This document shows positions 3,986 through 51,528 of a stretch of 64,000 nt of DNA, one piece after another. A program made the translations under genes and the position numbers. The notes under the pieces were generated by a model, which saw nothing but the letters and a program-made list of their open reading frames with translations, had not been told where the DNA came from and did no database searches. Within the stretch, counting starts at the first letter, position 1, and every line of letters starts with the position of its first letter. The DNA is taken from IMG/VR virus record IMGVR_UViG_3300037502_002993, positions 1 to 64,000 of that record. One strand, given 5' to 3'.

Positions 3986-4615
3986 TTACTCCTCCATTGG
4001 CTGTGAGAGGTGCTCTTCGAGCTCCTCATCTGTTACAGCTTCCAACACCACACGCCACCCATAATTCGCGAGCGTGCCCGAAGAAGCGTCCGTGAGCAGG
4101 CCCTCTGCAGACGAAGACCAACGGTAGACATGACAGTTGGGGTCGTCAGGGTCTGCCCCTTGAACCCAACTTGATCTACCTTCTCCGGAACCCAATCCTA
4201 AGTCATCATCGGTGTAGTTGACGTCCCACTTCCAGTTAAACGGATCGTCCACATGGATCGGATACATAAACCGATCCCATTCATCACTCGTTAGCAGGCG
4301 TATCTTGTAGCGGTGATTGCCAATAAATATAACCCTAGTGCCGTCTACCACACCGCCAGCCACTAGTGCATCATAAGAGACTGAGTGGACTAGAGTACGG
4401 ATAGATACGTATAGCGGCCTGCCATTGTCCTCGAATACTAGCCAACCCTGGTCTTCGTTGTGTGGGACTCCGTCTTCCAATCCAACCAACTCAATCAGCT
4501 CTGGGTAGGGGATCAGATCTTCTCCCGATATCACACCGTAAAAGCCAAGGGTGTTGTAACCATACTCTTTTCCTTCAAAACCTGGAACTGATGGATTAGT
4601 TGCTACCGTCTTCAT
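3986..4615 (-). CDS. Jumbo-phage GFYG..GWRxxL family protein (putative C-type-lectin-like fold; candidate DGR target)
   Basis: GFYG, WLVF, IRLL..EWDR, G.SSWVQG and GWRVVLE motifs; paralog of 4632..5396 and 43265..44089. Confidence 0.75.
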   Translation of the reverse strand: MKTVATNPSVPGFEGKEYGYNTLGFYGVISGEDLIPYPELIELVGLEDGVPHNEDQGWLVFEDNGRPLYVSIRTLVHSVSYDALVAGGVVDGTRVIFIGNHRYKIRLLTSDEWDRFMYPIHVDDPFNWKWDVNYTDDDLGLGSGEGRSSWVQGADPDDPNCHVYRWSSSAEGLLTDASSGTLANYGWRVVLEAVTDEELEEHLSQPMEE

Positions 4616-4631
4616 TTTAAATACCTCACTT

Positions 4632-5396
4632 TTAAGTTTGATTGCTATAGTTTCGAGCTTTCAGTTCTGATTCTACTCGAATCAATGTTTTTCGAAGGGA
4701 TGCAGTGCTGATCTGCGACCAGTTAATGTCATCGACTGCCCTAGAATCCACTGGTGTGTGGTCGAGATCCGCCCCCACGGTAGGCTGTGCTAACCCCACC
4801 GGCTCCAGCACCACACGCCACCCAACATTCGGGTGCGCGTCCGAAGAAAGGATCGCGATCCCGTTCTCTACAGACGAATACCCACGACAGACACGGTAGT
4901 GGGGGTAGTGACAGTTGGGGTAAATGGGGTACACCCCTTGAACCCAACTGGCCTGTCCATCTCCGGAGCCTACTCCTAAGTCATCATCGGTGTAATCACA
5001 CCCCAAATTTTGGCCGGTGGGGTCAGATACATGTAGCGGTGAAATGAGGTGGTCCCACTCCTCATTTTCAGGTATGCGTACCCGATAGTTAACCCCTCCA
5101 ATCTGATGGATGATTCTTGAACCATCCACTAGACCGCGCTCTTCCAACTCCCGAAAACTGACGCCGTAGGCAGTTGTCAACATGGATATGAAAAGTGGCT
5201 TTCCACGCCAGAAGAACTTCAGCCATTCTCCGTTTCTGTTATGTACTTTTTCGGGGTGTATGCCTGCCCATTCAGCGAGGTCTCCGTAACTGATTAGAGT
5301 TTTGGGATCTACCCGACCGAAGAATCCCAAATCACGATCTCCTAACAATAAAAGACGACCACCAGGCACTGTCTTTAGTAATTTGTTCATGTCCAT
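4632..5396 (-). CDS. Paralog of the same family (candidate DGR target)
   Basis: GFFG, WLKF, YRVR..EWD, SWVQG..RG..GWRVVLE motifs. Confidence 0.75.
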   Translation of the reverse strand: MDMNKLLKTVPGGRLLLLGDRDLGFFGRVDPKTLISYGDLAEWAGIHPEKVHNRNGEWLKFFWRGKPLFISMLTTAYGVSFRELEERGLVDGSRIIHQIGGVNYRVRIPENEEWDHLISPLHVSDPTGQNLGCDYTDDDLGVGSGDGQASWVQGVYPIYPNCHYPHYRVCRGYSSVENGIAILSSDAHPNVGWRVVLEPVGLAQPTVGADLDHTPVDSRAVDDINWSQISTASLRKTLIRVESELKARNYSNQT

Positions 5397-13506: not shown

Positions 13507-13916
13507 CGAGATCTTCAAGTGGGGTCGTTACGCCCACCCCGCGGTGTGTCTCCCTCACGGGAGTCATCCGCTGCTCCAGGCTTTCCCTGGATGCCGAGAC
13601 TATCTCTTGATCCTCTCCCAGATGGAGTAGGACCCTCCCCATTTCCCCGACCGATAACTTGCCGGGTACAGGCTGGTAAGACCTTAGTCGTTGAGCACAT
13701 CCCATATCCATCCGCAGGGAATGGACTTAGGGACTTCGCTGCGGATTACCCATTTCACTCCAGGGACTGGAGATCATCCTTACGCTTTTTACCGCACCCA
13801 AGTAGTTAGCTTGGACCCCGTGGGGTGTCTGACGACACCGGTCACTCTTTCGAGCACGAGTTGGTACGTAAGGCTTTAGTGGCTTCCCGCGATTAGAGGA
13901 GGTTCACTCAGGACTC

Positions 13917-14736
13917 TCATCCTGAGCGGGCCGTAGGTACGTAATAATGCAATCGGTATCCTTCCACAACGCGACATCTAGCGATTGCTTTGATGACGTC
14001 GTTTTTACTTCCAAGGGTATTGGAAAAGTGTTCAGCTGCTTTAGTGATATTGGTGAAGAACAACTCACCGCCTTCATTGTCAACAGCAATCACACCACGG
14101 GCACGGTTTTTGGGGTTATCTCTAAAGATGGCCAAATCCCGCTCGTTGAACTCCGGCCAGGGAGTGTCATCGCCCTCTTGACGAAACAGGTAGCCGTAGT
14201 AAGGCCTGTCCCATTTTTTCTTGATCTGATTAAGAAGTCCTCCAGGATACTCTAACCTTAAGTCTTCATTGACACTCCCCTTCTTTTAAGAAGGGGATTC
14301 TTGCTTCATTGAACTGACTTACCTTCGGTAAGGAAGGCAGTGGTCACTTTCTCCACAAGCGTTTAGTGAGTCCGTATGCCCTACGGCCTCTGCTAAAGTC
14401 ACACTCAATGGGCCAGCGATAGCGATACCCAATGTTTGATGGGTGGAGGTTATCCCAATTCCCATCGATGTGAAACGGTTCGACCTTCCACCAATGGTGA
14501 TAGCCTAGCCTTAACTTCCCAAACGCCGCCAGTACCAACAGAGCGACGGGGATTTCACTTATCACCCCTCCAGTGTTAACGCTAACTACCCACCCTAGCA
14601 TCTCATCAAAGCTAGGGGTTATTTCCACCCCGTTATGGAAAACCTGGCCGCTTTCCATAACCCTGACTTCCCCGGTAGTCAATGCCGGATCAATCAGTCC
14701 AAACCCTTGTTCGTTAGAAAGGTACTTTTCAAACAT
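13917..14736 (-). pseudogene. Intron-encoded HNH-type homing endonuclease, disrupted by a TnpB right-end insert
   Basis: N-terminal part 14409..14736 has HIDGNWDNLHPSNI; C-terminal part 13917..14267 is open for 116 codons with GYLF..PWP and a NUMOD1-like FTNITKAAEHF. Confidence 0.75.
14269..14408 (-). mobile_element. Stand-alone IS200/IS605 right end / TnpB omegaRNA, copy 1
   Basis: Near-identical to 50072..50212; ends GGGGAGTGTCAA on the minus strand; no tnpB and no left end. Confidence 0.88.
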
Positions 14737-26992: not shown

Positions 26993-27436
26993 CAAATGTC
27001 TTCAGTGTGGTTCGTTAGGCCACACCCGCCACCTCCCCGCCTCACGGCGGTAAGGCGCTGCTCTGGGCGTTACCCAGACTGTTGAGATCATCTCTTATTC
27101 CACTTCCTGTGGAATCCTCCCGTTTTGACCCCACTTGGGGCCTACGCTACTCATCACTGTGATCCATTCCTTGGCAGTGCTTTCGCTGACCGTTGAGCCC
27201 ACTCCTTATCAATTAAGACTTAGGAGCTTCGCTGCGTGATTGGACAATCTCCACCGTTATTACCGACTGGCGTGTTTGTAACGCCAGGAGCGGCTAGTAG
27301 CCGCCCGTACCCAGTTAATTAGACTGGCCGCTAGTTTGTTTCCAGAACTAGTTTGGTAGATGGAGCTCTAAGCCCGTCCCCGCAATTAGAGAGGTTGTTT
27401 AGCTGTATGTTACCATACAGGGTGACATCACTGTTT
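26993..27436 (-). ncRNA. Group I intron 3 of the beta' gene (444 nt, no ORF)
   Basis: Exon GGUGAU pairs with internal guide GUCACC with a U-G at the splice site; AATTGCGGGGA and AATCACGCAGC core elements; ends GAAGACATTTG. Confidence 0.88.
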
Positions 27437-27935: not shown

Positions 27936-28402
27936 CGGTGCCTTCAGTAGGGGGCGTTACTCCCTACCCGCTACCCTTCTGTCTCTCGACAGTAAGGCGC
28001 TGCTCCAGGTTTTCCCTGGATGCCGAGACTATATCTTCACCCGCCAGCTTTAGACTGGGTAGGGTGTCTTCCGTTTCCCCGCCCGATCACTTGGCAGGTA
28101 CAGGGGCCCGAATCCCTTAGTCGTTGGGCACATCCCATATCCCTGTAAAAGGAACTTAGGGACTTCGCTGCGTGATTCCCCATTTTGCCTTATCTAGCGC
28201 ATCCTCGTCTCTTTTACTGTACCGCTGTGGTTAGCAGCGCCCCTGTGGGGTGTCTGACGACACCGGTCACTCTTTCGAGCACAGGTTAGTGTACGAGGCT
28301 TTAGTGGGTTCCCGTCAATTAGGAAGAACACCGCCCAGAACTTTCATCCTGGGGGAACATTAGGAAAGTTTCTCCAATCGAGGTATTTTAACTTTCCTGT
28401 CT
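27936..28402 (-). ncRNA. Group I intron 1 of the beta' gene (467 nt)
   Basis: AATTGACGGGAA, AATCACGCAGC, GACTAAG and AAGATATAGTC core elements; starts after CCC AAT; its P1 pairing is not obvious by eye. Confidence 0.85.
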
Positions 28403-34019: not shown

Positions 34020-35173
34020 TTGACACTCCCCCTCCTAAAGTAGGGGGATTCTTGCTTCATTGAACTGACTTACCTTCGGTGAGGAAGGCAGAGGCCCTGT
34101 TCTCCACAAGCGTTTAGTGAGTCCGTATGTCCTACGGCCTCTGCTGACTCATAGCTCAAGCTACATCTAAGCGGTGTTCTTGGATAAACACCGCCGTCAG
34201 TGTTTGTCTTAAGTGACTCGCTGGTGGGAGTTGTTCCAATGCCATGTTCCGCAGGTTGATGGCGGCATTGTGATCTCGATCATGCTGTGTTCCGCAACTA
34301 GGGCACTCCCACCAGCGTTCGTTCAGTTTAAGTTTGTTGGACCCTTCTAGTCGATGGTCACACGCACTGCACGTCTGTGTACTCGGAAAGAATCTCTCTG
34401 CAATGACGACCTTGCAGTGCTGCGACTCATCGGCCTTGTAGACCAACATGGACAGGAACTGACGCCATCCACAATCAGCAATGTGTTTGGCTAGACGTCG
34501 GTTCCTGACCATGCCTTCAATGTTGAGGTTCTCAATAGCAATGGTCATGCATTGGTCTACAAGACCTCTGGAGAGCTTGTGCTGAAAGTCCATCCGACAC
34601 CGCTTGGTTTTTGCGTATATCTTGGCGACTTTCAGCCGTTGTTTTCTGTAGTTGGCACTACCCCTCACCATTCTTGCTAACTTCCGTTGTGCTCGTGCCA
34701 ACCTGACCGCATGTTTCTGTTGGTATTTGGGATTGTCATACTCCTTCCCTTCTGAGTCTACCGCAAAGGTCTTAATCCCTAAGTCCAATCCCAAATGAGA
34801 CTCCCCATTCGTGAGTCTTGGTTCACATTCACAAATGAAACAGGCGTAATATTCCCCACTAGACTCACGAATAATACTGACAGAACTGGGTGGGGTGGGG
34901 AGCACCCCACCCCACTTTTCGTTCTTGTAACTCCATTTAGTTTTGATAGGGGAATGCATTGCCTTAGCAATGCAGAATTCCCCACTCTCCAAATCTAAGG
35001 AGAATGCAGCGTTCGTCAGTCGGATGGACTGACGACTTTGTTTCTTTTTAAACTTGGGAAATCCAATCTTCCCTTTTCCTTTAAAGAAAGATTGGAAAGT
35101 TGTCCCGAGGTCCCTAAGAGACTGCTGCAAGATGACTGAGGAGACCTCATAGAGAAACCCATGCTCTTTCTTT
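34020..35173 (-). mobile_element. 5'-truncated tnpB element, copy 2 (right end/omegaRNA at 34020..34155)
   Basis: Colinear with 50072..51232; homology stops at 35173; no left end. Confidence 0.88.
34156..35173 (-). pseudogene. tnpB: TnpB lacking about 68 N-terminal residues
   Basis: RuvC GLDLG, IENL, DRDHNAA and the Zn finger are retained; in-frame TAA just upstream and no native start. Confidence 0.85.
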
Positions 35174-35210: not shown

Positions 35211-37343
35211 TCAATAGTAGTCACTCACCAAGCGAGAAATCTTCTTGTCCTGAAAGAAGAAACCGAATGACTCAAGCATCAGGTAGAAGGCTCCCATGGT
35301 GTTAAAGATGATCTTACGGGCATCAATGCCTGCGACAATCTCCTTAGGGATGCCGTGAGTTTCTGCGACACTCTCGGGAACGAGGATGGTGGTCAAGCCC
35401 TTCTTACCTGTATCAGCGAGATAGGTTTTAAGACGGTGTGCTAAGTGATCATTTCCCATCCTCTCACACCACTCATCAAGCTCTTTTCTTCCATCGGCCC
35501 TTACCGAGACCTTCACGACACTGTAAGGGGGTGGCAAGGTATCGCCAAGAGACTGTGCGAACACATCTCGCCACAGGAGGTACTGCTGGTAGGCTGGGGC
35601 ATTCTCACCTCCCTTATACGAATCCGCAGGCTTCACCTGACCGGTGGTCATGTAAAGATACCCGCCTCGTTCAATGTCCTGATAAATCTCCCGTTCGATA
35701 TCGCCAACATCCTTTAGGAGGTCCCGCATGCAGATGAGTTTCTCTGCCTTAAATGTCGCAATGATCTTTTCCATTAGTGCTCTGGCTTTATCATTTACAT
35801 GCTTGGGCACCTTAGAGTCCCTTAGCCCAACTCCCTTCACTTCGAGTTGGGCTTCGGGGAACATCACCCCTTCCTTGGCATCGCGAGACGCATAGTAGTG
35901 CTTTGATCGCGTAGTCAGTGAGATCACGGAGAAGTAATATTCATTTTTCATCGCAAGCAGACGTAGCTTGGCTTTCGCAACCCCCATGTTGGCTGATTGA
36001 ATTGCCAGGATGTGGGCCACCATGTGAGAGACCAGATAGATGATCACAAACACGATACGTTTGGCATCTGCACTGTGCGATACTCGCCCAAAGGCTTGCT
36101 CAACCCAATACTGGCAGGTAAACATAGTGGAGTCGGTATCGGAGATCAGGGCGGCTCGACGATAGGCTGAAGGGAACGCATGGATGCTGGAGGGGACGGT
36201 ATTAGTCAGCCACAATGTCTCGATGAGTAGACGATAGCGCTCCATTAACCGAATGGTTTTCACTCCAGTGGCTTTTACCCGAGCCCACAGGTGCATGTCA
36301 CCATCACGTTCCAGACGTTCGACATCTCGTGACTGTAGGGCATCGAAATTCAAGAAGTTAGCAAGGATCTTGGTATCGTCGTCTAACTGACTGTACTCAC
36401 TGTCCTCTACCTGGTCAAACTTTTCATCCCCCGGCATGGAAAGTTCGTTGAGAAACGCCATCACAAACTCTGGGTTGTGTTTATGTAGGTGGTACAGATC
36501 TGCTACATACACCACTGCGGTTCTTTCCATGTCAGTGAAGCCCGACACCAGGGTTTCAATCAGTGCCAGATTCTTCGGACTGATCCAGTATTTATCGGTG
36601 CTCCACCGGATGCAAGCCATCACCTCAGCGACGGATGGGATATGTAAGTTAAAGATCTCAACACACTGCTTGAGCTTCTCCAGGTCGGTACTGGTGACCA
36701 CCGCAAGGAGATTGGTCTTGGTGATCTCAGGGGAGTAGTAGTGACGACTGCCCATCAGAAACTTTTCATTTGCTGCATTGGCGTAGCTGGTCGCTGTGCG
36801 GGTGTTGCTGGTCAATGAGGAGTGAGTGCTCTTAAGACGGAGCATAGTGGCGGCACTGACAGTAGCGCCACTGTAGGAGTTATTGTTTTCTTTGTAGACC
36901 GCCTGAATGGCATTCTTCACCTTGGCGAGCTCAAAGTCACCTCTCGCGTTAGCTTGGTTCATCTCCTTCTTGACCTTTTTACGGTTTCTCACGCCCTCTT
37001 CCAAGAACTGCGCGTGTTTGGCCTGACGTACCGTCTCCGGGACATAGACTGCCATGGAGGGGGAAAGCAACAGGTCCTGTTTCTTAACTCGCTCTAGGAA
37101 TTTGGTGAAGGGAACCGATACCGCTTTCTTATCCCAATGTTTGTCCTTGGTCAATACCAACGATTGGGGGTCAACTAACTTTCCACGCTTGAAATCCAGG
37201 TACTCATGAATAAAGGCCTCCGCTTGAGACGGGTCGCATTGGGTATGTGCCGTCAGGTAGCGTGCTGCTTGTACTCTTGCACTATCGAGCAGATCCAAAT
37301 CACGCTGGTAGCTATCAACACTTGGAATAAACGGATTTTGCAT
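35211..37343 (-). CDS. Family B-related DNA polymerase subunit (phiKZ gp50-like)
   Basis: K.NNNSYSG, ISDTDSTMF, KHYY, EVKGV motifs. Confidence 0.88.
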   Translation of the reverse strand: MQNPFIPSVDSYQRDLDLLDSARVQAARYLTAHTQCDPSQAEAFIHEYLDFKRGKLVDPQSLVLTKDKHWDKKAVSVPFTKFLERVKKQDLLLSPSMAVYVPETVRQAKHAQFLEEGVRNRKKVKKEMNQANARGDFELAKVKNAIQAVYKENNNSYSGATVSAATMLRLKSTHSSLTSNTRTATSYANAANEKFLMGSRHYYSPEITKTNLLAVVTSTDLEKLKQCVEIFNLHIPSVAEVMACIRWSTDKYWISPKNLALIETLVSGFTDMERTAVVYVADLYHLHKHNPEFVMAFLNELSMPGDEKFDQVEDSEYSQLDDDTKILANFLNFDALQSRDVERLERDGDMHLWARVKATGVKTIRLMERYRLLIETLWLTNTVPSSIHAFPSAYRRAALISDTDSTMFTCQYWVEQAFGRVSHSADAKRIVFVIIYLVSHMVAHILAIQSANMGVAKAKLRLLAMKNEYYFSVISLTTRSKHYYASRDAKEGVMFPEAQLEVKGVGLRDSKVPKHVNDKARALMEKIIATFKAEKLICMRDLLKDVGDIEREIYQDIERGGYLYMTTGQVKPADSYKGGENAPAYQQYLLWRDVFAQSLGDTLPPPYSVVKVSVRADGRKELDEWCERMGNDHLAHRLKTYLADTGKKGLTTILVPESVAETHGIPKEIVAGIDARKIIFNTMGAFYLMLESFGFFFQDKKISRLVSDYY

Positions 37344-41596: not shown

Positions 41597-42394
41597 ATGA
41601 ACCCCATTAGCGTTGCCCTGGAAGAAATCGGCTTTCGTATTCCCCAGCAGCTGCTTCAACAAACCTTTATTACCCAAGACTTGAGAAACTGTTTGGAGAT
41701 GGTCTCATTGGAGACCCGCATCAAAGAAGCGGTGATCGATACCCGTGTGATGCGTGACATTAACCTGTTGGGAGGGACTGAAGCTTTCATTCCGTTATCC
41801 CCTCCGGTAAATGCCCACCAGACCGATCCATACACCATCGTCTACCAGATCCCGGCAGAGGTCGTGCAGAACCGTAATATCGTACAGGTTTACTCAGTCC
41901 ACTTTGCGATGATCGGCTATCAGAACGCTGGCATGGCCATGAGCTACACCGAGACCCCACTGGCCAGTGCCACTCGGTCAGTGCTGGACAGTGCCATGCA
42001 GACTCCCCCAGCAGCGACGAGCTATTTGAATCTGATCGCCCCCAATACAGTAATGGCCCGGTTTGTCTATGCCCCCTACCCCCAGGCATTCATGCGAGTG
42101 CGTCTGGGGAGTGATGCGTCCTTAAGTCATATCCGCCCCCAGATGTACCCCACCTTCTCTGACCTATGCGTGCTTGCCGTGAAAGCGTACATTTATAACA
42201 AGATGGTCATTGTGGTGGATGAAGGGCAACTGCATGGGGGTCAAATGCTTGGGACGTTCCGGGAGATCATGATGAACTACGCTGACTCCGATGAGCTGTA
42301 TCGGGAGACACTAAAGAAATGGCGCAAGCAGAGTGTCCTGAATGATCCAGAGGCTAACCGTCGTCATATTCGCACGATTGTGGGTCGTCCTTAA
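41597..42394 (+). CDS. Conserved core protein
   Basis: AGGAG RBS; MNPI..IP.QLL and LAVKAYIYN motifs. Confidence 0.8.
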   Translation: MNPISVALEEIGFRIPQQLLQQTFITQDLRNCLEMVSLETRIKEAVIDTRVMRDINLLGGTEAFIPLSPPVNAHQTDPYTIVYQIPAEVVQNRNIVQVYSVHFAMIGYQNAGMAMSYTETPLASATRSVLDSAMQTPPAATSYLNLIAPNTVMARFVYAPYPQAFMRVRLGSDASLSHIRPQMYPTFSDLCVLAVKAYIYNKMVIVVDEGQLHGGQMLGTFREIMMNYADSDELYRETLKKWRKQSVLNDPEANRRHIRTIVGRP

Positions 42395-42412
42395 CTGTTA
42401 GGAGTCCGGACT

Positions 42413-43249
42413 ATGCTCTATTCGCTGTTTCAAGACCAACAGGATTCCTTGTTTGGTGGGATGGCTGATGGGGGGTTTATTCACCCCATGTTCCACTCCT
42501 TGACGTTTCGGTTCGGTATTGCGGGGAATGTGGTTACCCCTCTGGTAGAACTGAATTTCTTCGGGCCCTACCGGATCTGGTTGATACCCAATGTAGAAGT
42601 GACAGGGACTACACCGAGGCTTGATTTTATTGGTCACCACTCAAGGCGTTACACTGGGAAGGCACTACACCAACTCGCCTTCTCTGAGTCTGGGGAGGTG
42701 TCACTCCTCACTGAACGTTGGGAGGTCATTAACCTCACCGTAGGGACCTGGCAGGACAGTGCGCGCAAATGGCGCGTAGCGGAATCTGTGGAAGGTCTGT
42801 GGCGGAACATGGCCAACCGTATTGCGGGGAGTGAGTTTGTTTCACGTGAAGTGCTGTCCATTGATGATGCCCTGGCGGAGTTCGACATCGACCACACATT
42901 GACTAACCTTGATACCGACCACCTGATTGTGACGGGTATCCAATGGGTCGGTGGGGTGTCTGCTCACCTTCAGTTAGGGTTCAACGAGACTTACGTATTG
43001 AAGGTCTTTGGGGGTGGGGATACCCCGATGTTCTCAACTGATCCCACCGCACTGGTTGGCGAGGTATTACGCCGACTCCGGTTTGAAGAGAACGGTGAGG
43101 TCGTGGTAGACACGTACCGAGGTTCGCTGACGGTTGAACGCTTTGATGGAGGGAGTGGTGAACCTCTGTATCTGGTGGATGAGGGCACCTTGGGTTTCTG
43201 GATTGGGATACGTCCTCGGGTGACTGGGGTTCGATTCACTGAACTGTAA
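42413..43249 (+). CDS. Hypothetical protein
   Basis: AGGAG RBS, 278 aa. Confidence 0.7.
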   Translation: MLYSLFQDQQDSLFGGMADGGFIHPMFHSLTFRFGIAGNVVTPLVELNFFGPYRIWLIPNVEVTGTTPRLDFIGHHSRRYTGKALHQLAFSESGEVSLLTERWEVINLTVGTWQDSARKWRVAESVEGLWRNMANRIAGSEFVSREVLSIDDALAEFDIDHTLTNLDTDHLIVTGIQWVGGVSAHLQLGFNETYVLKVFGGGDTPMFSTDPTALVGEVLRRLRFEENGEVVVDTYRGSLTVERFDGGSGEPLYLVDEGTLGFWIGIRPRVTGVRFTEL

Positions 43250-43264
43250 AATGAAGGAGTTAAC

Positions 43265-44089
43265 ATGAAAAGCAAGCTACAAATCGGCAGTACTGCGGAT
43301 AACAATCAACTCAACCTGCCTTCTGGGATGTTGACTATTGACCGGGAGCGTAACGCGCTCCGACTGTTCGATGGAGAAACCCAAGGCGGCTTTGAGGTCC
43401 TGGGAACACGGGCCTATGAGCCCTCACCTCCTGGACCCACTGAGTTAATTGCGGGTGATTTAACCACTGGTTTTTATGGCGAGGTGGGGCCTGAGGAGTT
43501 CATCACCTACGGTGCCCTGAGTACCTTGGTTGGGTTGAGTGCGGGGACCCTCCAGCATGATGCTGAATCCCTCTGGCTGAAGTTCTCCCTCGATGGGTCC
43601 CCGCTGTACGTCATGAAGAAGCCTGCACGACACACGGTGTCGTGGGATCAGCTGCACGCAGCGGGCCTGGTCTTTGGGACCAACACTGTGGAGATTGATG
43701 GACTCACCTACCAGGTCCGCCTGCTCCGTGGCGCTGCCTCCGACCCCACCACCGATGCCACGGGTTGGGACCTCCCCACCAGCCACGGGTCGGAGTGGAA
43801 CCGGTTGTTGTACCCCATCCACTCCGGTGTGCACACCGACACCAGTAACCCCAGTGTGCACACCGACCCCACTGCCGCGCCTTTCGGCGCCTGGGCGCAG
43901 TACAGTGACAGTGATTTGGTATTACGTGGTACCGACAATGGTCGCGCCAACTGGTGTCAAGAAACCACCGCCACCAGCACCCAGCGCGTGTCTCGTGGTT
44001 CTGGTGTTACGTCCTTGTCTCGCTCCACCTCTTCGGGTACGGCTTCGCTTTTCGGTTGGCGTGCCGCTCTAGTCTTCGTTGGCGACTAG
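43265..44089 (+). CDS. Putative virion/tail protein of the GFYGEV..GWR family; candidate DGR target
   Basis: N-terminal LRLFDGETQGG module; GFYGEV, WLKF, SEWNRLLY, WCQE..RG..GWRAAL; adenine-depleted 3' end. Confidence 0.8.
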   Translation: MKSKLQIGSTADNNQLNLPSGMLTIDRERNALRLFDGETQGGFEVLGTRAYEPSPPGPTELIAGDLTTGFYGEVGPEEFITYGALSTLVGLSAGTLQHDAESLWLKFSLDGSPLYVMKKPARHTVSWDQLHAAGLVFGTNTVEIDGLTYQVRLLRGAASDPTTDATGWDLPTSHGSEWNRLLYPIHSGVHTDTSNPSVHTDPTAAPFGAWAQYSDSDLVLRGTDNGRANWCQETTATSTQRVSRGSGVTSLSRSTSSGTASLFGWRAALVFVGD

Positions 44090-44246
44090 CGCGAGCGACT
44101 GGCCTTTCAGGCCGAATAAGCTACAGGTGTAAGTACGTTGGGACCCTTAGTACAGTAACGCCTGGACATGGGTCCCAACCGTGGTTAAGAAATAAAGCGC
44201 AACGTAACCCCCCTCCCGCAGTGGGAGGGGGGTTTATGTCGTTTAC

Positions 44247-44954
44247 CTAAGACATTACGTCTTCCACATCCCACAGTAAATGTTGAAGAAATCCGGCACC
44301 GGCCTCTTCGGTTCTATTCCACCAACGGAAGATCCAACTAACATACGCTTCACTGGATTCCTCGTTTGGGTGGGATTCCAGGGTACCGATCTCAAATACC
44401 ATGCCGTGCGGGAGCCATGCGTCGACTAACAACTCCCAGGTCTCACTATTACCTTCCTCAACTACCACGCACAGGTATCCCGGTTCGTCGTCAACGTCTT
44501 GGTGGATATGTCCACTACATGACCAGACCGTGGCGATTCCGGGAAGTTGGTTCAGTGCCTGCACTAACTCACGAATGGGCTCATCCAGACAGCTAATGTC
44601 AAGTGCCAGGGCATGGGTCTTAAAGAAAGCAAAACGTTCCGTCGGTAAGTATTGACACTCCCCTTCTTTTAAGAAGGGGATTCTTGCTTCATTGAACTGA
44701 CTTACCTTCGGTAAGGAAGGCAGTGGTCACTTTCTCCACAAGCGTTTAGTGAGTCCGTATGCCCTACGGCCTCTGCAGCCAAATGACCTCACCAGGAGGT
44801 CACGCTGTTTCGCATTCGGATAGATCCGAAAGCGAAACGCTTTCGTAACCATGATGACCTCCTGGGAAAGTGGATTGGTGTGTATGTTAGTATTTAGTGG
44901 TCTTATATCCCCGCCATAAATGACGGGGTTTTACGACCACAACTGATAAGGCAT
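44247..44954 (-). pseudogene. 137-aa gene with D.PI..N..T..SCSGH motif (Tyw3-like N-terminus), interrupted after codon 3
   Basis: Removing 44652..44945 gives ATG CCT TAT|TAC TTA CCG (MPYYLPTERF..LDEPIRELVQALNQLPGIATVWSCSGH). Confidence 0.8.
44652..44945 (-). mobile_element. 294-bp internally deleted (MITE-like) tnpB element, copy 3
   Basis: Left end and first about 25 tnpB codons joined to the right end/omegaRNA; inserted 3' of TTAT. Confidence 0.92.
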
Positions 44955-45028
44955 AGTAGAATTCCTAGGGCATAGGCGCCCTCCCGAAGGAGGGCAGTGT
45001 GTTGGGTGTTAGGGAATGTAAGGAGAGA

Positions 45029-45529
45029 TCATGACACCTCCCCCAGTTTAGAGGGGCATAAATAGCTATCCCAACACGGTACACTTTCACGCATTTCCAG
45101 TCTGGCTTTCTTTCTCAGCCACATCTCGGGCTCGGGTGAATCAAGGATCACGTTTTCACGGGGGATGTTCTCCGTTTCACGAAACACAAAGGTCTCTAAC
45201 AATACCTCGGGCTTTACCTTCTGCAGTGGGTAGAGGTAATCGCTATCATAGAAGAACCACATTGCGTAAGACTTCTGTAATAAGCGTCCCACAACCGACT
45301 TAGGGATAGGGAAGTAGGCAGGTTTGATTGGGAGACCATTGCACTCGGCAACCACTTCGACTCGATGATAGAGGTGGTGGTCGAACTGTGTGGTAGTAAC
45401 AAAGAGAAACCCTCCGCGTTTAGCATTAAGCTGAACCACGTGTTTGAGTGTTAGGGTAAAGGGACTCAGGACGAGTCCCAGTTCCTCACTCAGCGCTTGA
45501 CCCACCCGATGGGTTTTCTTCTTGCCCAT
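45029..45529 (-). CDS. Hypothetical protein
   Basis: 166-aa ORF. Confidence 0.65.
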   Translation of the reverse strand: MGKKKTHRVGQALSEELGLVLSPFTLTLKHVVQLNAKRGGFLFVTTTQFDHHLYHRVEVVAECNGLPIKPAYFPIPKSVVGRLLQKSYAMWFFYDSDYLYPLQKVKPEVLLETFVFRETENIPRENVILDSPEPEMWLRKKARLEMRESVPCWDSYLCPSKLGEVS

Positions 45530-45703
45530 CGGGATTCCCCAGGTTATTTAATTTTCACGCGCTCTTCTGCACTCAGGTGCTGGCCTTGCTTTTTAAGCGT
45601 AGCCACCTTGTTAGCACGCCTCTTAAAATGCTTGTTATTCTTCATCATCCGTTCTTCGATCTTCGGAGGGAGTTTATCCATGGTAGTTACTCCGTAGGTA
45701 GGT

Positions 45704-48058
<2,355 letters not shown>

Positions 48059-48068
48059 TTAGTGGGCG

Positions 48069-48392
48069 TTATTTCGGTAGGTAGTCGTCGACATTAAGGT
48101 GTTCGTGCTGACAGAACGCCTCAAAGGACGTAACCTCCACTGGGAAGGTCGGTGGAATGCTACTGCCGGCTAGACGCACCAGCTCAATCTTAGCTACCTC
48201 TTCGGCTTCATCGATCACGTGGTACCAAACCCCATCAGAGAAGGCACCTGGAACAACACCGTGCTTGCGCTTTAACTCAACGATAGCGCTAATGGTCAAA
48301 TCGTGCTCTTCAGTGCCAATCGGCGGAAGGGGAAGACGATAAACCGCTTCATGCGCATACACGCGAATGCGTTTGATCAGCAGTGCACTCAT
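48069..48392 (-). CDS. Hypothetical protein (start MSALL)
   Basis: ORF in operon. Confidence 0.55.
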   Translation of the reverse strand: MSALLIKRIRVYAHEAVYRLPLPPIGTEEHDLTISAIVELKRKHGVVPGAFSDGVWYHVIDEAEEVAKIELVRLAGSSIPPTFPVEVTSFEAFCQHEHLNVDDYLPK

Positions 48393-48409
48393 AGTCAGAC
48401 TCAACTCTA

Positions 48410-48700
48410 CTAATGGATGGCAGTTCGCCTTGCATGACTGACAATTTGGCTGACTCTCGACTCCCCTATACCGAAGGCCCTTCCAATAACGGCATAAGAG
48501 AATCCCTGCTGGGCATACACCGTGATGGCGTGGTCTCTGAGTTCCGTCAACTGGCAACTGAGTCGCCTTAGCTCCTCAATATCCTCTAACGTCATCATCT
48601 CTCCCGACTCAATGCGGGCCTGCGCTAAATCTAACTGCTGCTTGGCCTCTTGGAGATACTGCAGGGCATTCTTGTTGTGGTTCTGAATGGTGGGGGTCAT
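48410..48700 (-). CDS. Small HTH protein (sigma region-4-like)
   Basis: GFSYAVIGRAFGIGESRVSQIV. Confidence 0.7.
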   Translation of the reverse strand: MTPTIQNHNKNALQYLQEAKQQLDLAQARIESGEMMTLEDIEELRRLSCQLTELRDHAITVYAQQGFSYAVIGRAFGIGESRVSQIVSHARRTAIH

Positions 48701-48732
48701 GGTCGTGCTCTCTGTGGTTAGGTGAAGTGATA

Positions 48733-49152
48733 TTAATGGATAAAAGGTGAATCAGAATTTTCGATCGACATCACCGCCATCGGAACGCGGGGGTCAAGTT
48801 CCATGATGCTGGCAATGATATCTGTGTGTTCTTTCAGCTGTTCACTCACTGTGCTTTTACCAACTCCACGAAGTTTGGTGTTGATTCCGCTGACCTCTTT
48901 GAGTCTAGCGATCAACTCATCCAAGGTAAATTTCACCTCAAGTATTCCAGGAACTAGTTCATTGAGAAACAGATAGCCAACACTGAGGTCATGGCAATAG
49001 CACAGTATCTCAAAACCAAACTCGGGTGAGAGACCGAGTGTAGTGACAAGACCTCCCGTCTCGTCGCTTGGCTCAATCCCAAGCAGAACCACCCTCCCCT
49101 TACTTATTTCAACGCTAAGCTCTTGGTAGAACTCGTCACTGTGATCTTCCAT
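48733..49152 (-). CDS. Hypothetical protein
   Basis: 139-aa ORF. Confidence 0.6.
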   Translation of the reverse strand: MEDHSDEFYQELSVEISKGRVVLLGIEPSDETGGLVTTLGLSPEFGFEILCYCHDLSVGYLFLNELVPGILEVKFTLDELIARLKEVSGINTKLRGVGKSTVSEQLKEHTDIIASIMELDPRVPMAVMSIENSDSPFIH

Positions 49153-49170
49153 TATGGACCTTCCTTGGTA

Positions 49171-49419
49171 TCATGAGAGGGGGTGGGAAAGTGCCCGATT
49201 GAGAAGCGCTGTGTCCTCCTCTAGGCTTTTACATTGCAGAGAAACTGACTCTCCATAGCAGATTAACTCACCGTCAACATGCTTGACAAACCCCGCTGAG
49301 ATTACTCCCACTTCATCTTTCCCCAGCGATTGGGTAAAGTCACGATGTTGCACTCGTTTATCAAACGTGACCATGACGTCACGAGCCATCCCTATCTTCT
49401 TATATCGTACATATTTCAT
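49171..49419 (-). CDS. Small phage protein
   Basis: MKYV..F....QH..ISAGFV..CYGESVSL; GGAG RBS. Confidence 0.7.
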   Translation of the reverse strand: MKYVRYKKIGMARDVMVTFDKRVQHRDFTQSLGKDEVGVISAGFVKHVDGELICYGESVSLQCKSLEEDTALLNRALSHPLS

Positions 49420-49434
49420 TGTTGTATTCTCTCC

Positions 49435-50034
49435 TTAATTGCCAAGTGTGCGCAGTTGGTGGGCAATTCGCTCATCCAGTGACAATTCTTCATCAGGGTA
49501 GCGGTTCTCCTCGGCATCGAACTCGTAGAGCTCAACTTTTTCATTTAAGTACCCCTCGATGCCCTGAAGGTCCTCTGCCGTGAGGTGTAGCGTTTTGGCG
49601 TGTTTCTTCACCAAAGGCAAAAGGTCCGGGTATTGCTTGCTCCAAGGGGCTAGAATATACCCTCGGGCGTAAAGGTGTTTGAGGTTGGCATTGCCTTCCG
49701 CGTACTCCTGCGCTACTTTCAGTACCGGATCAAGCGGTTCGTAGTAACTCTTTAAGGGGTCATTGGTTTTAGCAAACCCCCAACTACGATATCGCTTACC
49801 GAAGGGGTCTTCGAAATAGGAAATCGTCACGCACTGCCAAAAGCAGGGATGGTGGGAAAGTTGGAAGGTAGCCGCATCGATCATTTCACGCCGTACGGCC
49901 AAACGGTGATGCACGCCGAGGGGTCCTGCTTCTCCCGCGATGTTGTAGCGGACGAAATAGATTCCTTCCGCCTGTCGTCTAAGGCGCTTAAAATCGGTAC
50001 CGGTGAGTTTACGCTTTTTGATTTTCTTTGCCAC
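49435..50034 (-). CDS. Hypothetical protein (start GTG, MAKKIKK)
   Basis: AAGGA RBS; the longer track start lies inside the IS right end. Confidence 0.65.
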   Translation of the reverse strand: MAKKIKKRKLTGTDFKRLRRQAEGIYFVRYNIAGEAGPLGVHHRLAVRREMIDAATFQLSHHPCFWQCVTISYFEDPFGKRYRSWGFAKTNDPLKSYYEPLDPVLKVAQEYAEGNANLKHLYARGYILAPWSKQYPDLLPLVKKHAKTLHLTAEDLQGIEGYLNEKVELYEFDAEENRYPDEELSLDERIAHQLRTLGN

Positions 50035-50071
50035 GCTTTTTTCCTTTTTCATCACATTCACTACAGTGCGG

Positions 50072-51528
50072 TTGACACTCCCCTTCTTAAAAGAAGGGGA
50101 TTCTTGCTTCACAGAACTGACTTACCTTCGGTAAGGAAGGCAGAGGCCACTTTCTCCACAAGCGTTTAGTGAGTCCGTATGCCCTACGGCCTCTGCTAAA
50201 GTCACTACTCAAGCTACATCTAAGCGGTGTTCCTGTAAGAACACCGCAGTCAGTGTGTTCCTCAAATGGCTCGCTGGTGGGAGTAGCTCCAATCCCATCT
50301 TCTTAAGATTGATAGCGGCATTGTGATCACGATCATGTTGAGCGCTACAACTGGGACACTCCCACCAACGCTCGCTGAGCTTGAGTTTGTTCTTACCATG
50401 TAGTCGATGGCCACACGCACTGCAAGTCTGTGTACTCGGGAAGAATCTCTCTGCGATAATCACCTTGCAGTGCTGCGACTCATCGGCCTTGTAGATCAGT
50501 TGGGACAGGAACTGCCGCCATCCACAATCACTGATGTGTTTAGCGAGTCTCCTGTTCCTGACCATGCCTTCAATATTCAAGTTCTCAATAGCTATTGTGG
50601 AGCATTGGTCTACAAGGTTACGAGAGAGCTTATGCTGAAAGTCTAACCGACACCGCTTGGTTTTTGCGTATATTTTAGCGACTTTCAGCTGTTGCTTTCT
50701 GTAGTTACTGGAACCTTGCTTTTTCCTAGCAAGAGAGCGTTGCGCCCTCGCCAGTCTCCTGGCGTATTGCCCTTGGTATTTGGGATTGGCATATTCCCTT
50801 CCTTCTGAGTCCACGGCAAAGGTCTTAATCCCCAAATCCAATCCCAAATGGGCGTCTCCATTCGTGAGCCGGGGTTCACACTCGCAAATGAAACACGCGT
50901 AGTACTCTCCATTGGACTCACGAATGATACTGACAGAACTGGGTGGGGTGGGGAGGACCCCACCCCACTTCTCATGCTTCTGTTTGTAACTCCATTTAGT
51001 TTTGATAGGGGAATGCATGGCTTTAGCCATGCGGAATTCTCCACTCTCCAAATCTAAGGAGAATGCAGAGTTCGTCAGCCGGATGGACTGACGACTGAGT
51101 CGTTTTTTAAACTTGGGAAATCCAACTTTCCCTTTCCCTTTGAAAAAGGATTGGAAAGCAGTCCCGAGGTCCCTAAGGGACTGTTGTAAGATGACTGAGG
51201 AGACCTCATAGAGAAACCCATGCTCTTTCTTTAACTCGGGGAGTCTCACCACGAGTGCATTCGCACTCAGTTTGGGTTTCTCTAGTGTTGGGTTTGTCTG
51301 GTAAGCCTCATACTCCTCCCGTACCCTGTTGAGTACTTGATTCCAGACAAACCGTTTACAGCCAAATGACCTCGCCAGGAGGTCACGTTGTATGGCATTC
51401 GGATAGAGCCGAAAGCGAAACGCTTTCGTAACCATGATGACCTCCTGGGAAAGTGGATTGGTGTATATGTTAGTATTTAGTGGTCTTATATCCCCGCCAT
51501 AAATGACGGGGTTTTACGACCACAACTG
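50072..51528 (-). mobile_element. Complete tnpB-only IS200/IS605 (IS1341-group) element, copy 4
   Basis: Minus strand: TTAT|CAGTTGTGG left end with CCCCGTC-ATTTAT-GGCGGGG hairpin, tnpB, omegaRNA, right-end hairpin and TCAA; no target duplication. Confidence 0.93.
50209..51435 (-). CDS. tnpB: TnpB RNA-guided endonuclease
   Basis: KAFRFRLYPN, FGC.RFVWN, GFPKFKK, RuvC D (GLDLG), E (IENL) and D (DRD.NAA), CSAC..CPSC. Confidence 0.95.
   Translation of the reverse strand: MVTKAFRFRLYPNAIQRDLLARSFGCKRFVWNQVLNRVREEYEAYQTNPTLEKPKLSANALVVRLPELKKEHGFLYEVSSVILQQSLRDLGTAFQSFFKGKGKVGFPKFKKRLSRQSIRLTNSAFSLDLESGEFRMAKAMHSPIKTKWSYKQKHEKWGGVLPTPPSSVSIIRESNGEYYACFICECEPRLTNGDAHLGLDLGIKTFAVDSEGREYANPKYQGQYARRLARAQRSLARKKQGSSNYRKQQLKVAKIYAKTKRCRLDFQHKLSRNLVDQCSTIAIENLNIEGMVRNRRLAKHISDCGWRQFLSQLIYKADESQHCKVIIAERFFPSTQTCSACGHRLHGKNKLKLSERWWECPSCSAQHDRDHNAAINLKKMGLELLPPASHLRNTLTAVFLQEHRLDVA

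What the first reader, a model, noticed from the sequence alone, without database searches (positions are those of the whole stretch)
43975..44185. Third paralog ends in an adenine-depleted VR-like region followed by hairpins
Seen: 43984-44070 has only 3 A in 87 nt and shares the TCT TCG NNY ACG NNY NCG NNT NNY GGN TGG CGT skeleton. Its third positions differ from the other two paralogs. About 12 nt after the stop is GGCCT-TTC-AGGCC (GAA loop on the opposite strand), then a perfect 10-bp inverted repeat GTTGGGACCC/GGGTCCCAAC. Known: DGR targets have a 3'-terminal variable region with a short downstream hairpin. Inference: this is the best candidate for an active target, probably using a second template, on a virion-type protein.
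Basis: partly seen in the sequence, partly recalled or inferred. Interest (0 to 1): 0.72.

Follow-up and report, generated by a model that had tools for sequence, protein, structure and literature searches.

The report
Frozen DGR variable repeat, jumbo phage
The adenine-poor stretch is a genuine variable repeat written by a diversity-generating retroelement (DGR) into the tip of an Mtd-like receptor-binding protein of a phiKZ-like jumbo phage, but this genome has lost the reverse transcriptase and most of the template, so the repeat now looks frozen.

Summary

It is the variable repeat (VR, 43984-44072) at the 3' end of gene 43265..44089. The gene encodes an Mtd-like protein: an Mtd_N domain plus a C-type-lectin fold.

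Four closer paralogs lie outside the window, near 115, 137, 151 and 172 kb. All five, plus two orthologs from another metagenome, share an identical backbone. They differ almost only at codon positions 1-2 of 12 codons.

An avd-like gene sits next to the 115-kb copy. Against it, the window VR differs at 14 of 17 adenine sites and 5 of 59 other sites.

In this genome the template stops after 25 nt and no reverse transcriptase was found. The VR contig is invariant, at the depth of its flanks, in the source metagenome.

Verdict: a real DGR target, probably no longer being rewritten. It is a new member of a known kind. Five dispersed targets in a phiKZ-like jumbo phage are unusual.

The parts
43265..44089 (+). 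DGR target gene (274 aa): Mtd-like protein with an Mtd_N domain, a C-type-lectin-fold body and the VR at its C-terminus
   Evidence: ORF. AlphaFold model mean pLDDT 95.5. Best PDB matches are Mtd (Z 8.0), TvpA 2y3c (Z 7.6) and then FGE-type folds. The family profile hits the Mtd N-terminus at E 7e-5. Homologs are annotated as virion structural proteins in phiKZ-like phages.
43984..44072 (+). Variable repeat (VR), 89 nt. It corresponds to the 92-nt template repeat of the relative, minus one codon after 43998.
   Evidence: Alignment to L022:384-475. 14 of 17 template-A sites differ against 5 of 59 non-A sites, Fisher p 9e-9. Variable residues are S243, S246, S250, S252, S254, T255, G258, T259, A260, L262 and F263.
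44060..44072 (+). 3' end of the VR that matches the template's 3' end (IMH-like), 12 of 13 identical
   Evidence: The orthologs L013 and L014 keep it. In the four other close paralogs it is displaced downstream by inserted units of about 60 nt.
44069..44089 (+). Small stem-loop CTAGTC / GACTAG (6 bp, 9-nt loop) that ends on the stop codon
   Evidence: Read from the sequence and present in the predicted fold.
44101..44113 (+). Hairpin GGCCT-TTC-AGGCC, 29 nt after the VR end
   Evidence: An identical copy lies downstream of the 115-kb paralog and in ortholog L013.
44137..44179 (+). Conserved stem-loop: 10-bp stem and 23-nt loop carrying GTAACGCCTGGAC (44155-44167)
   Evidence: The loop motif occurs only three times in the genome, each time downstream of a VR gene (44k, 115k, 151k). 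The 151-kb version has a different 7-bp stem but the same loop length and motif position.
44206..44234 (+). Intrinsic-terminator-like hairpin followed by a T-rich tail
   Evidence: Similar CCCCTCCC...GGGAGGGG hairpins follow the 137-kb and 151-kb copies.
3986..4615 (-). Distant family member with the same C-terminal skeleton; it does not match the template repeat recovered here
   Evidence: Family profile hits. 6 of 27 non-A sites differ from the template.
4632..5396 (-). Distant family member with the same C-terminal skeleton; it does not match the template repeat recovered here
   Evidence: Family profile hits. 19 of 71 non-A sites differ from the template.

Best explanation
Window 43984-44072 is the variable repeat of a diversity-generating retroelement (DGR) target.

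Shown:
- The gene encodes an Mtd-like protein with an Mtd_N domain and a C-type-lectin fold. It belongs to a phiKZ-like jumbo phage.
- It is one of five close paralogs, near 44, 115, 137, 151 and 172 kb. Their last 90 nt or so share one backbone and differ at the first two positions of the same 12 codons.
- The template (TR) for that backbone sits after an avd-like gene beside the 115-kb copy. It is intact in a relative. In this genome only its first 25 nt remain, and no reverse transcriptase was found.

Inferred mechanism: an error-prone reverse transcriptase, working with Avd, copied the TR RNA and replaced template adenines with random bases. The cDNA then replaced each VR (mutagenic retrohoming). 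That explains the A-poverty. Every A of the template is a mutable site, and in this copy 14 of 17 were replaced by non-A bases. The last template used in this lineage differed from the relative's at about four non-A sites.

Inferred present state: the 3' part of the TR and the reverse transcriptase have been deleted, so the five VRs are frozen products of past diversification.

The downstream stem-loops probably serve target recognition, termination or both. That was not tested.
For: Paralogs and backbone:
- Four more copies were found at 81-88% identity.
- In the codon alignment the flanks are near-identical, third positions included, and variation is confined to codon positions 1-2.
- Across 7 VRs there are 25 variable columns, 21 of them at positions 1-2. 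Of 53 invariant columns only 1 is A (P 1.3e-5). Letters at the variable sites are near-uniform, with A at 28%.

Template:
- An avd-like gene lies at genome 114687..115034(-): PF22296 bAvd at 1.5e-5 and phrog_3206 'Avd protein of DGR' at 1.2e-8.
- Its 95%-identical homolog sits on ENA contig L022 and is followed by a 92-nt A-rich template.
- Pooled over the 7 VRs, A sites change far more than non-A sites, Fisher p 6e-40.

Ortholog:
- L013 is 95.3% identical over 897 nt. It has 14 of its 42 differences inside the 64-nt VR core, all at the variable codons' first two positions or the one-codon indel, and none in 44054-44180.

Loss of the machinery:
- PF00078, phrog_1423 and Brt (tblastn and phmmer) found no reverse transcriptase.
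- The genome ends overlap by an exact, unique 120 nt.
- The alignment to L022 stops inside the template at genome 114624.
- The same junction appears in contig L024, from another metagenome record.
- The VR contig 43961-44129 has depth 87.3 against flanks at 85.8 and 84.6, with no differences. Run X2 carries the same sequence over 44006-44180.
Against: - The reverse transcriptase of the relative was not seen, because contig L022 ends 126 nt after the template. A complete working element is therefore inferred, not shown.
- The avd hits fall below Pfam's curated cut-offs.
- All five VRs here differ from both the relative's template and the local remnant at shared non-A sites, so the last template used was not recovered.
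- Logan contigs drop rare variants, so low-level VR heterogeneity in X1 cannot be excluded.
- avd is intact and under purifying selection (29 synonymous against 5 nonsynonymous codon differences), so the element may have been lost only recently or may still act in trans.
- The hairpins do not match the canonical DGR hairpin.
Confidence: 0.85

Rival explanations
1. The VR is still an active target. It is rewritten in trans by a TR-RT supplied by a co-infecting relative phage, or by a variant genome in the same population that kept the cassette.
For: - avd is intact and under purifying selection.
- This copy keeps a template-like 3' end, 12 of 13 identical.
- The downstream 127 nt with its stem-loops is identical in the ortholog despite 3.4% background divergence, P 0.012.
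- Run X3 holds a relative about 95% identical, at depth 28-30. A contig there runs into the template's downstream spacer, and several VR variants sit at depth only 5-9.
- DGR components work in trans from a plasmid (PMC5758913).
Against: - No RT and no full TR were found in the closed genome.
- The VR contig matches its flanks in depth with no differences at about 86x, and a second sample carries the same sequence over the part of the VR its contig covers.
- None of the loose ends listed for X1 resembles the template spacer (43 further loose-end rows across the four runs were not shown).
Confidence: 0.1
2. There is no retroelement history. The pattern comes from ordinary diversifying selection and gene conversion among paralogous receptor-binding genes, and the A-poverty reflects amino-acid and codon usage.
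For: - The paralogs do exchange sequence or get mis-joined: L024 is a mosaic of the 151-kb, 44-kb and 115-kb copies.
- More distant family members in other phages have variable C-termini with no template within 10 kb.
Against: - Third codon positions and the intervening codons are invariant while positions 1-2 are randomised.
- The changes map onto the adenines of an independently found template that sits next to an avd homolog.
- The remnant of that template is the best non-VR match in the genome and lies exactly where a TR is expected.
Confidence: 0.03
3. The missing RT and truncated template are an assembly artefact: the repeat caused the assembler to skip about 1.5 kb.
For: - The TR is a sixth copy of a repeated sequence.
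- A mosaic contig (L024) exists, which may be an assembly chimera.
- CheckV estimates 74% completeness.
Against: - Only about 14-25 nt are shared at the junction, much shorter than assembly k-mers.
- The same junction is found at 100% identity over 572 nt in a contig from another metagenome record.
- The assembly closes on a unique 120-nt overlap.
Confidence: 0.07

Closest known systems
Bordetella phage BPP-1 DGR (mtd VR1 - avd - TR - brt)
   Same: - The target protein has an Mtd_N domain and a C-type-lectin fold, with the VR at the extreme C-terminus.
- The gene order is target, then avd, then TR.
- The template is built of AAY codons with adenine-specific changes.
- The VR 3' end matches the TR 3' end.
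- Stem-loops follow the stop codon.
   Different: - There are five dispersed targets instead of one, up to about 70 kb from the TR site.
- The host phage is a 220-kb phiKZ-like jumbo phage, not a 42-kb temperate podophage.
- No RT was found and the TR is cut to 25 nt in this genome.
- The hairpins are not the 8-bp GC stem with a GAAA loop.
- Overall sequence identity to Mtd is low; only the N-terminal 50 residues are detectable by profile.
Treponema denticola DGR with TvpA and multiple remote targets
   Same: One template serves several C-type-lectin-fold targets scattered over the replicon. TvpA is the second-best structural match (Z 7.6).
   Different: That element is cellular and sits on a chromosome. 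Its targets are lipoproteins, not phage virion proteins, and it is intact.
Paralogous 'virion structural protein' families of phiKZ-like phages (PhiPA3 gp080, 201phi2-1, SCTP-2)
   Same: They are homologous over residues of about 56-240 at 31-44% identity, and each genome carries several paralogs.
   Different: No DGR signature or template was seen within 10 kb of the two more distant homologs examined (L006, L007). Their C-terminal DNA is not A-poor.

Membership tests
Diversity-generating retroelement (DGR) | A DGR-clade reverse transcriptase encoded on the same replicon | tested here: not met
   PF00078 found nothing at E<=10. phrog_1423 found nothing. Brt by tblastn and phmmer gave only noise. 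The genome closes on a unique 120-nt overlap.
Diversity-generating retroelement (DGR) | A TR/VR pair in the same genome whose mismatches fall at template adenines | tested here: not met
   Only the first 25 nt of the template survive, at genome 114648-114624(-). The best other match to a predicted full template is 38 of 78.
Diversity-generating retroelement (DGR) | Adenine-specific TR-to-VR differences, tested against the relative's template L022:384-475 | tested here: met
   Window VR: 14 of 17 A sites differ against 5 of 59 non-A sites. All 7 VRs: 8-14 of 19 against 2-6 of 60, pooled Fisher p 6e-40.
Diversity-generating retroelement (DGR) | Accessory gene avd next to the TR | tested here: met
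   Genome 114687..115034(-): phrog_3206 at 1.2e-8, PF22296 at 1.5e-5, PF05635 at 2e-4. The Pfam scores are below the curated cut-offs. The gene lies directly between a VR gene and the template remnant.
Diversity-generating retroelement (DGR) | VR at the 3' end of a gene encoding a C-type-lectin or Ig-fold variable protein | tested here: met
   Model pLDDT is 95.5. The top PDB matches are Mtd, TvpA and FGE-type folds.
Diversity-generating retroelement (DGR) | Hairpin or cruciform 4-34 bp after the VR with a 7-10 bp GC-rich stem and a 4-nt GRNA loop (PMC3240598) | tested here: not met
   The nearest candidate, GGCCT-TTC-AGGCC, is 29 nt after the VR but has a 5-bp stem and a 3-nt loop. The 10-bp stem has a 23-nt loop and starts 65 nt after the VR.
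Diversity-generating retroelement (DGR) | Ongoing diversification: VR heterogeneity within a population | tested here: not met
   In X1 the VR contig has depth 87.3 against flanks at about 85, with no differences. X2 carries the same sequence over 44006-44180. These are contigs, not reads, so rare variants would be missed.
Mtd-like receptor-binding proteins (Mtd_N + C-type-lectin fold) | N-terminal Mtd_N domain (PF18454) | tested here: met
   The family profile A3 hits Mtd residues 6-54 at E 7e-5. Many homologs carry a precomputed PF18454 hit. The single sequence alone gives no Pfam hit.
Mtd-like receptor-binding proteins (Mtd_N + C-type-lectin fold) | Intertwined trimer at the tail-fibre tip that binds a host surface receptor | not tested
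   No multimer prediction was run and no virion or binding data are available. 'Virion structural protein' is the annotation of distant homologs only.

The most novel reading that the evidence does not exclude
A lineage of uncultured phiKZ-like jumbo phages runs a single DGR on at least five dispersed Mtd-like receptor-binding paralogs, spread over 128 kb and up to about 70 kb from the template. It would use a non-canonical target element: a 7-10 bp stem with a 23-nt loop carrying GTAACGCCYGGAC. In genomes such as this one, which have lost the TR-RT but kept avd and the target signals, the VRs could still be rewritten in trans when a cassette-bearing relative co-infects.
Probability: 0.15. Interest if true: 0.7.

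Novelty: new member of a known kind. Interest (0 to 1): 0.5.

Why it matters
DGRs on phage receptor-binding proteins are well known. Three things here are less so.

- A comparative survey of 224 jumbo phages reported no FGS (C-type-lectin-fold) domains, the kind phage reverse transcriptases diversify (PMC7824862). Phage DGR targets are reported to lie almost always within 50 kb of the RT (PMC5758913). This case puts a multi-target DGR and a C-type-lectin-fold family into a phiKZ-like jumbo phage.
- It gives a natural pair for comparison: one phage with the template intact and one with it deleted. That pair can be used to ask how fast host range freezes once the element is lost.
- It points to a conserved stem-loop that may be an unrecognised target signal.

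Tried and rejected
- I first compared the gene with its two upstream neighbours (41597..42394 and 42413..43249). They are unrelated; one is DUF7484.
- An ungapped scan and blastn-short for a predicted full template in the genome found only the five VRs and a 14-nt remnant.
- Pattern scans and protein-based locus searches of viral contigs found nothing.
- The genome-contig scan gave six chance hits in Streptomyces and assorted MAGs, so there is no host-encoded template there.
- The metagenome-contig scan gave four chance hits and the two real orthologs L013 and L014.
- The genome search could not open the records behind L006 and L007. No template lies within 10 kb of those distant homologs.
- Rfam gave only a sub-threshold istR hit across the terminator, 22 bits against a cut-off of 45.
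- I tested whether the 60-nt tail units are copies of the template's downstream spacer. The similarity is weak (shuffle p 0.03-0.1), so this stays undecided.
- The two T-poor windows at about 83.3 kb and 188.6 kb look like terminator regions, not VRs.
- A literature search found no paper on DGRs in phiKZ-like phages.

Full report
**1. The observation**

Window 43984-44070 contains 3 A, 27 C, 26 G and 31 T. On this strand, no other 87-nt window in the 220,598-bp genome has so few A (mean 20.3, sd 4.2). A binomial gives P about 3e-7 for a single window.

None of 100 shuffles produced a match.

The stop codon is at 44087-44089. GGCCT-TTC-AGGCC lies at 44101-44113. The perfect 10-bp inverted repeat lies at 44137-44146 and 44170-44179. 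As single-stranded DNA, 44054-44240 folds with z = -5.2 against shuffles. A terminator-like hairpin follows at 44206-44234.

**2. The gene and its family**

The region is the 3' end of ORF 43265..44089 (274 aa).

- Its two upstream neighbours are unrelated.
- tblastn against phage genomes finds paralogous 'virion structural proteins' of phiKZ-like jumbo phages such as PhiPA3 gp080, 201phi2-1 and SCTP-2, at 31-44% identity.
- Many of the 113 metagenomic homologs carry a weak Mtd_N (PF18454) hit. They sit beside phiKZ_IP and PhiKZ_gp91 genes.
- A profile of 65 family members hits only Mtd of Bordetella phage BPP-1 in the PDB, over its N-terminal 50 residues (E 7e-5).
- The AlphaFold model has mean pLDDT 95.5. 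It matches Mtd best (Z 8.0), then TvpA (Z 7.6), then PvdO, the Lcl C-terminal domain and the formylglycine-generating enzymes. This is the C-type-lectin fold of DGR variable proteins. The Z values are moderate, but the top of the list is consistent and agrees with the sequence hit.

The genome itself is a distant, uncultured phiKZ-like phage. It has several phiKZ_IP paralogs. Its helicase is about 37% identical to those of Xanthomonas, Serratia and Erwinia jumbo phages.

**3.

The window is the first 64 kb of the genome. blastn of the VR region finds four more copies at 81-88% identity: 115278..116207(-), 136443..137276(+), 151452..152288(-) and 171740..172561(+).

A family profile finds nine members in all. 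They include the two at about 4 kb in the window, one at about 68 kb and one at about 116.3 kb.

In a codon alignment of the five close copies, the roughly 180 nt before the VR are almost identical, third positions included. Inside the last 22 codons or so, 12 codons vary at positions 1-2 only, and the codons between them are invariant.

**4. Orthologs from another metagenome**

A pattern scan of JGI metagenome contigs returned two real hits from one sample.

- L013 is the ortholog of the window copy, 95.3% identical over 897 nt.
- Of its 42 differences, 14 fall in the 64-nt VR core. All of these are at positions 1-2 of the variable codons or in a one-codon indel after 43998.
- None falls in 44054-44180 (enrichment p 2.5e-7).
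- L014 is the ortholog of the 151-kb copy.

Over the seven VRs there are 25 variable columns, 21 at positions 1-2. Of 53 invariant columns only one is A (P 1.3e-5). The letters at variable sites are close to uniform: T 43, A 41, C 36, G 25.

**5. The template**

The genome has no full template. A search for Avd found an avd-like gene at 114687..115034(-), directly downstream of the 115-kb paralog. The hits are phrog_3206 'Avd protein of DGR' at 1.2e-8 and PF22296 bAvd at 1.5e-5, the latter below Pfam's cut-off.

Its only homolog in the protein collection is 95% identical and lies on a 601-bp ENA contig, L022. In L022 the gene is followed by a 92-nt A-rich template (L022:384-475). This template is the VR backbone with AAY or ACN at the variable codons.

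Measured against this template:

| VR set | Template-A sites changed | Non-A sites changed | Fisher p |
|---|---|---|---|
| Window copy | 14 of 17 | 5 of 59 | 9e-9 |
| All seven VRs (range per VR) | 8-14 of 19 | 2-6 of 60 | 6e-40 (pooled) |

Four of the five non-A differences in the window copy are shared by most or all of this genome's copies. The last template used in this lineage therefore differed slightly from the relative's.

The template's 3' end (CGTGCCGCTCTGG) matches window 44060-44072 at 12 of 13 positions.

**6. State of the element in this genome**

- The alignment of L022 to the genome is 87% identical over 408 nt. It stops inside the template at 114624, so only 25 nt of the template remain.
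- That remnant contains the best non-VR match in the genome to the predicted template.
- The genes that follow are DUF4376, DUF1353 and a muramidase, not an RT.
- Three independent RT searches were negative.
- The genome closes on an exact, unique 120-nt overlap.
- The truncated junction is reproduced at 100% identity over 572 nt in contig L024, from another metagenome record.
- avd is intact. It differs from the relative's gene by 29 synonymous and 5 nonsynonymous codon changes, so the loss may be recent.

Laying Logan contigs of four runs on 42300-45300 gave the following.

- In X1, a 169-nt contig covers 43961-44129 with no differences, at depth 87.3. The unique flanks are at 85.8 and 84.6.
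- X2 carries the same sequence over 44006-44180, which covers the 3' three-quarters of the VR.
- X3 (sludge) holds a relative about 95% identical, at depth 28-30.
- In X3, one contig leaves the VR at 44070 and runs into the same spacer that follows the template in L022. Several VR variants there have depth of only 5-9.

This suggests that X3's phage has the template and a heterogeneous VR population. Contigs cannot prove it.

**7. The hairpins**

Canonical phage DGR hairpins have 7-10 bp GC-rich stems and 4-nt GRNA loops, 4-34 bp after the VR (PMC3240598). None of the three structures here fits that description.

The large stem-loop nonetheless looks functional.

- Its loop motif GTAACGCCYGGAC occurs only three times in the genome, each time downstream of a VR gene.
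- The 151-kb version has a different 7-bp stem but the same 23-nt loop, with the motif at the same loop positions.
- The whole 127 nt after GGTTGG is identical in ortholog L013 (P 0.012).

Whether it acts in retrohoming, in termination or in something else is untested.

**8. Comparison with the known and verdict**

The system works like the BPP-1 mtd DGR and shares its protein architecture and gene order. As an element in this genome, it fails the two core membership tests, because it has no RT and no full TR. It is best described as a decayed DGR with five orphan VRs.

This copy alone among the five keeps the template-like 3' end next to the VR. The other four have one to three tail units of about 60 nt inserted there. 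The claim is probably wrong about activity.

Five targets spread over 128 kb in a phage are unusual set against published surveys (PMC5758913). So is a C-type-lectin-fold family in a jumbo phage (PMC7824862). I found no paper describing a DGR in phiKZ-like phages.

Classification: new member of a known kind. Interest 0.5.

Noticed in passing
G000 115.1-115.3 kb, 137.2-137.5 kb, 151.2-151.5 kb and 172.5-172.7 kb (loci L003, L005, L002, L004): Four of the five VR paralogs carry one to three tandem units of about 60 nt, inserted between GGTTGG and the original template-like 3' end. Each unit re-encodes a C-terminal tail (W-R-A-V-L-V-P...stop), and the 172-kb copy also holds an inverted piece. Orthologs L014 and L023 of the 151-kb copy lack the insert. 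The origin is unknown. Aberrant retrohoming and recombination are both possible.
   Followed up: partly
window 44652-44785, also 14269-14402, 34020-34153 and 50072-50205, plus genome copies near 81.2, 92.6, 95.8 and 190.2 kb: A dispersed repeat family of about 134 nt. In relative contig L013 the sequence runs to 44776 and then continues at 50072. So window 44777-50071, which holds an NAD-dependent DNA ligase at 45704..48037(-) and small ORFs, is absent or elsewhere in the relative.
   Followed up: partly
L024 (JGI 3300035670, Ga0310129_0132062, 1434 nt): A mosaic contig: the 5' part of the 151-kb paralog, then the VR and 3' end of the window copy, then the sequence downstream of the 115-kb copy with avd and the truncated template. 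It is either an assembly chimera across repeats or a real recombinant between paralogs.
   Followed up: partly
run X3 (sludge metagenome, 2024) laid on window 43885-44194: A relative about 95% identical, at depth 28-30, shows several VR variants at depth 5-9 and a contig that runs into the template's downstream spacer. This may be an active DGR population. One joint goes back from 44194 to 43999.
   Followed up: no
window 13510-13587, 26997-27074 and 27939-28016: A three-copy family of 78-nt GC-rich repeats that look hairpin-forming. It has no evident link to the finding.
   Followed up: no
window 41597-42394: The gene two ORFs upstream of the target gene is a full-length DUF7484 protein (E 4e-85). 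It sits in a small plus-strand island of three genes, between replication genes on the minus strand: a divergent family B DNA polymerase at 35211..37343 and the ligase.
   Followed up: no
genome positions 83265-83351 and 188595-188690: The two most T-poor 87-nt windows of the plus strand. On the minus strand they read as A-poor stretches around terminator-like hairpins, not as VRs.
   Followed up: partly
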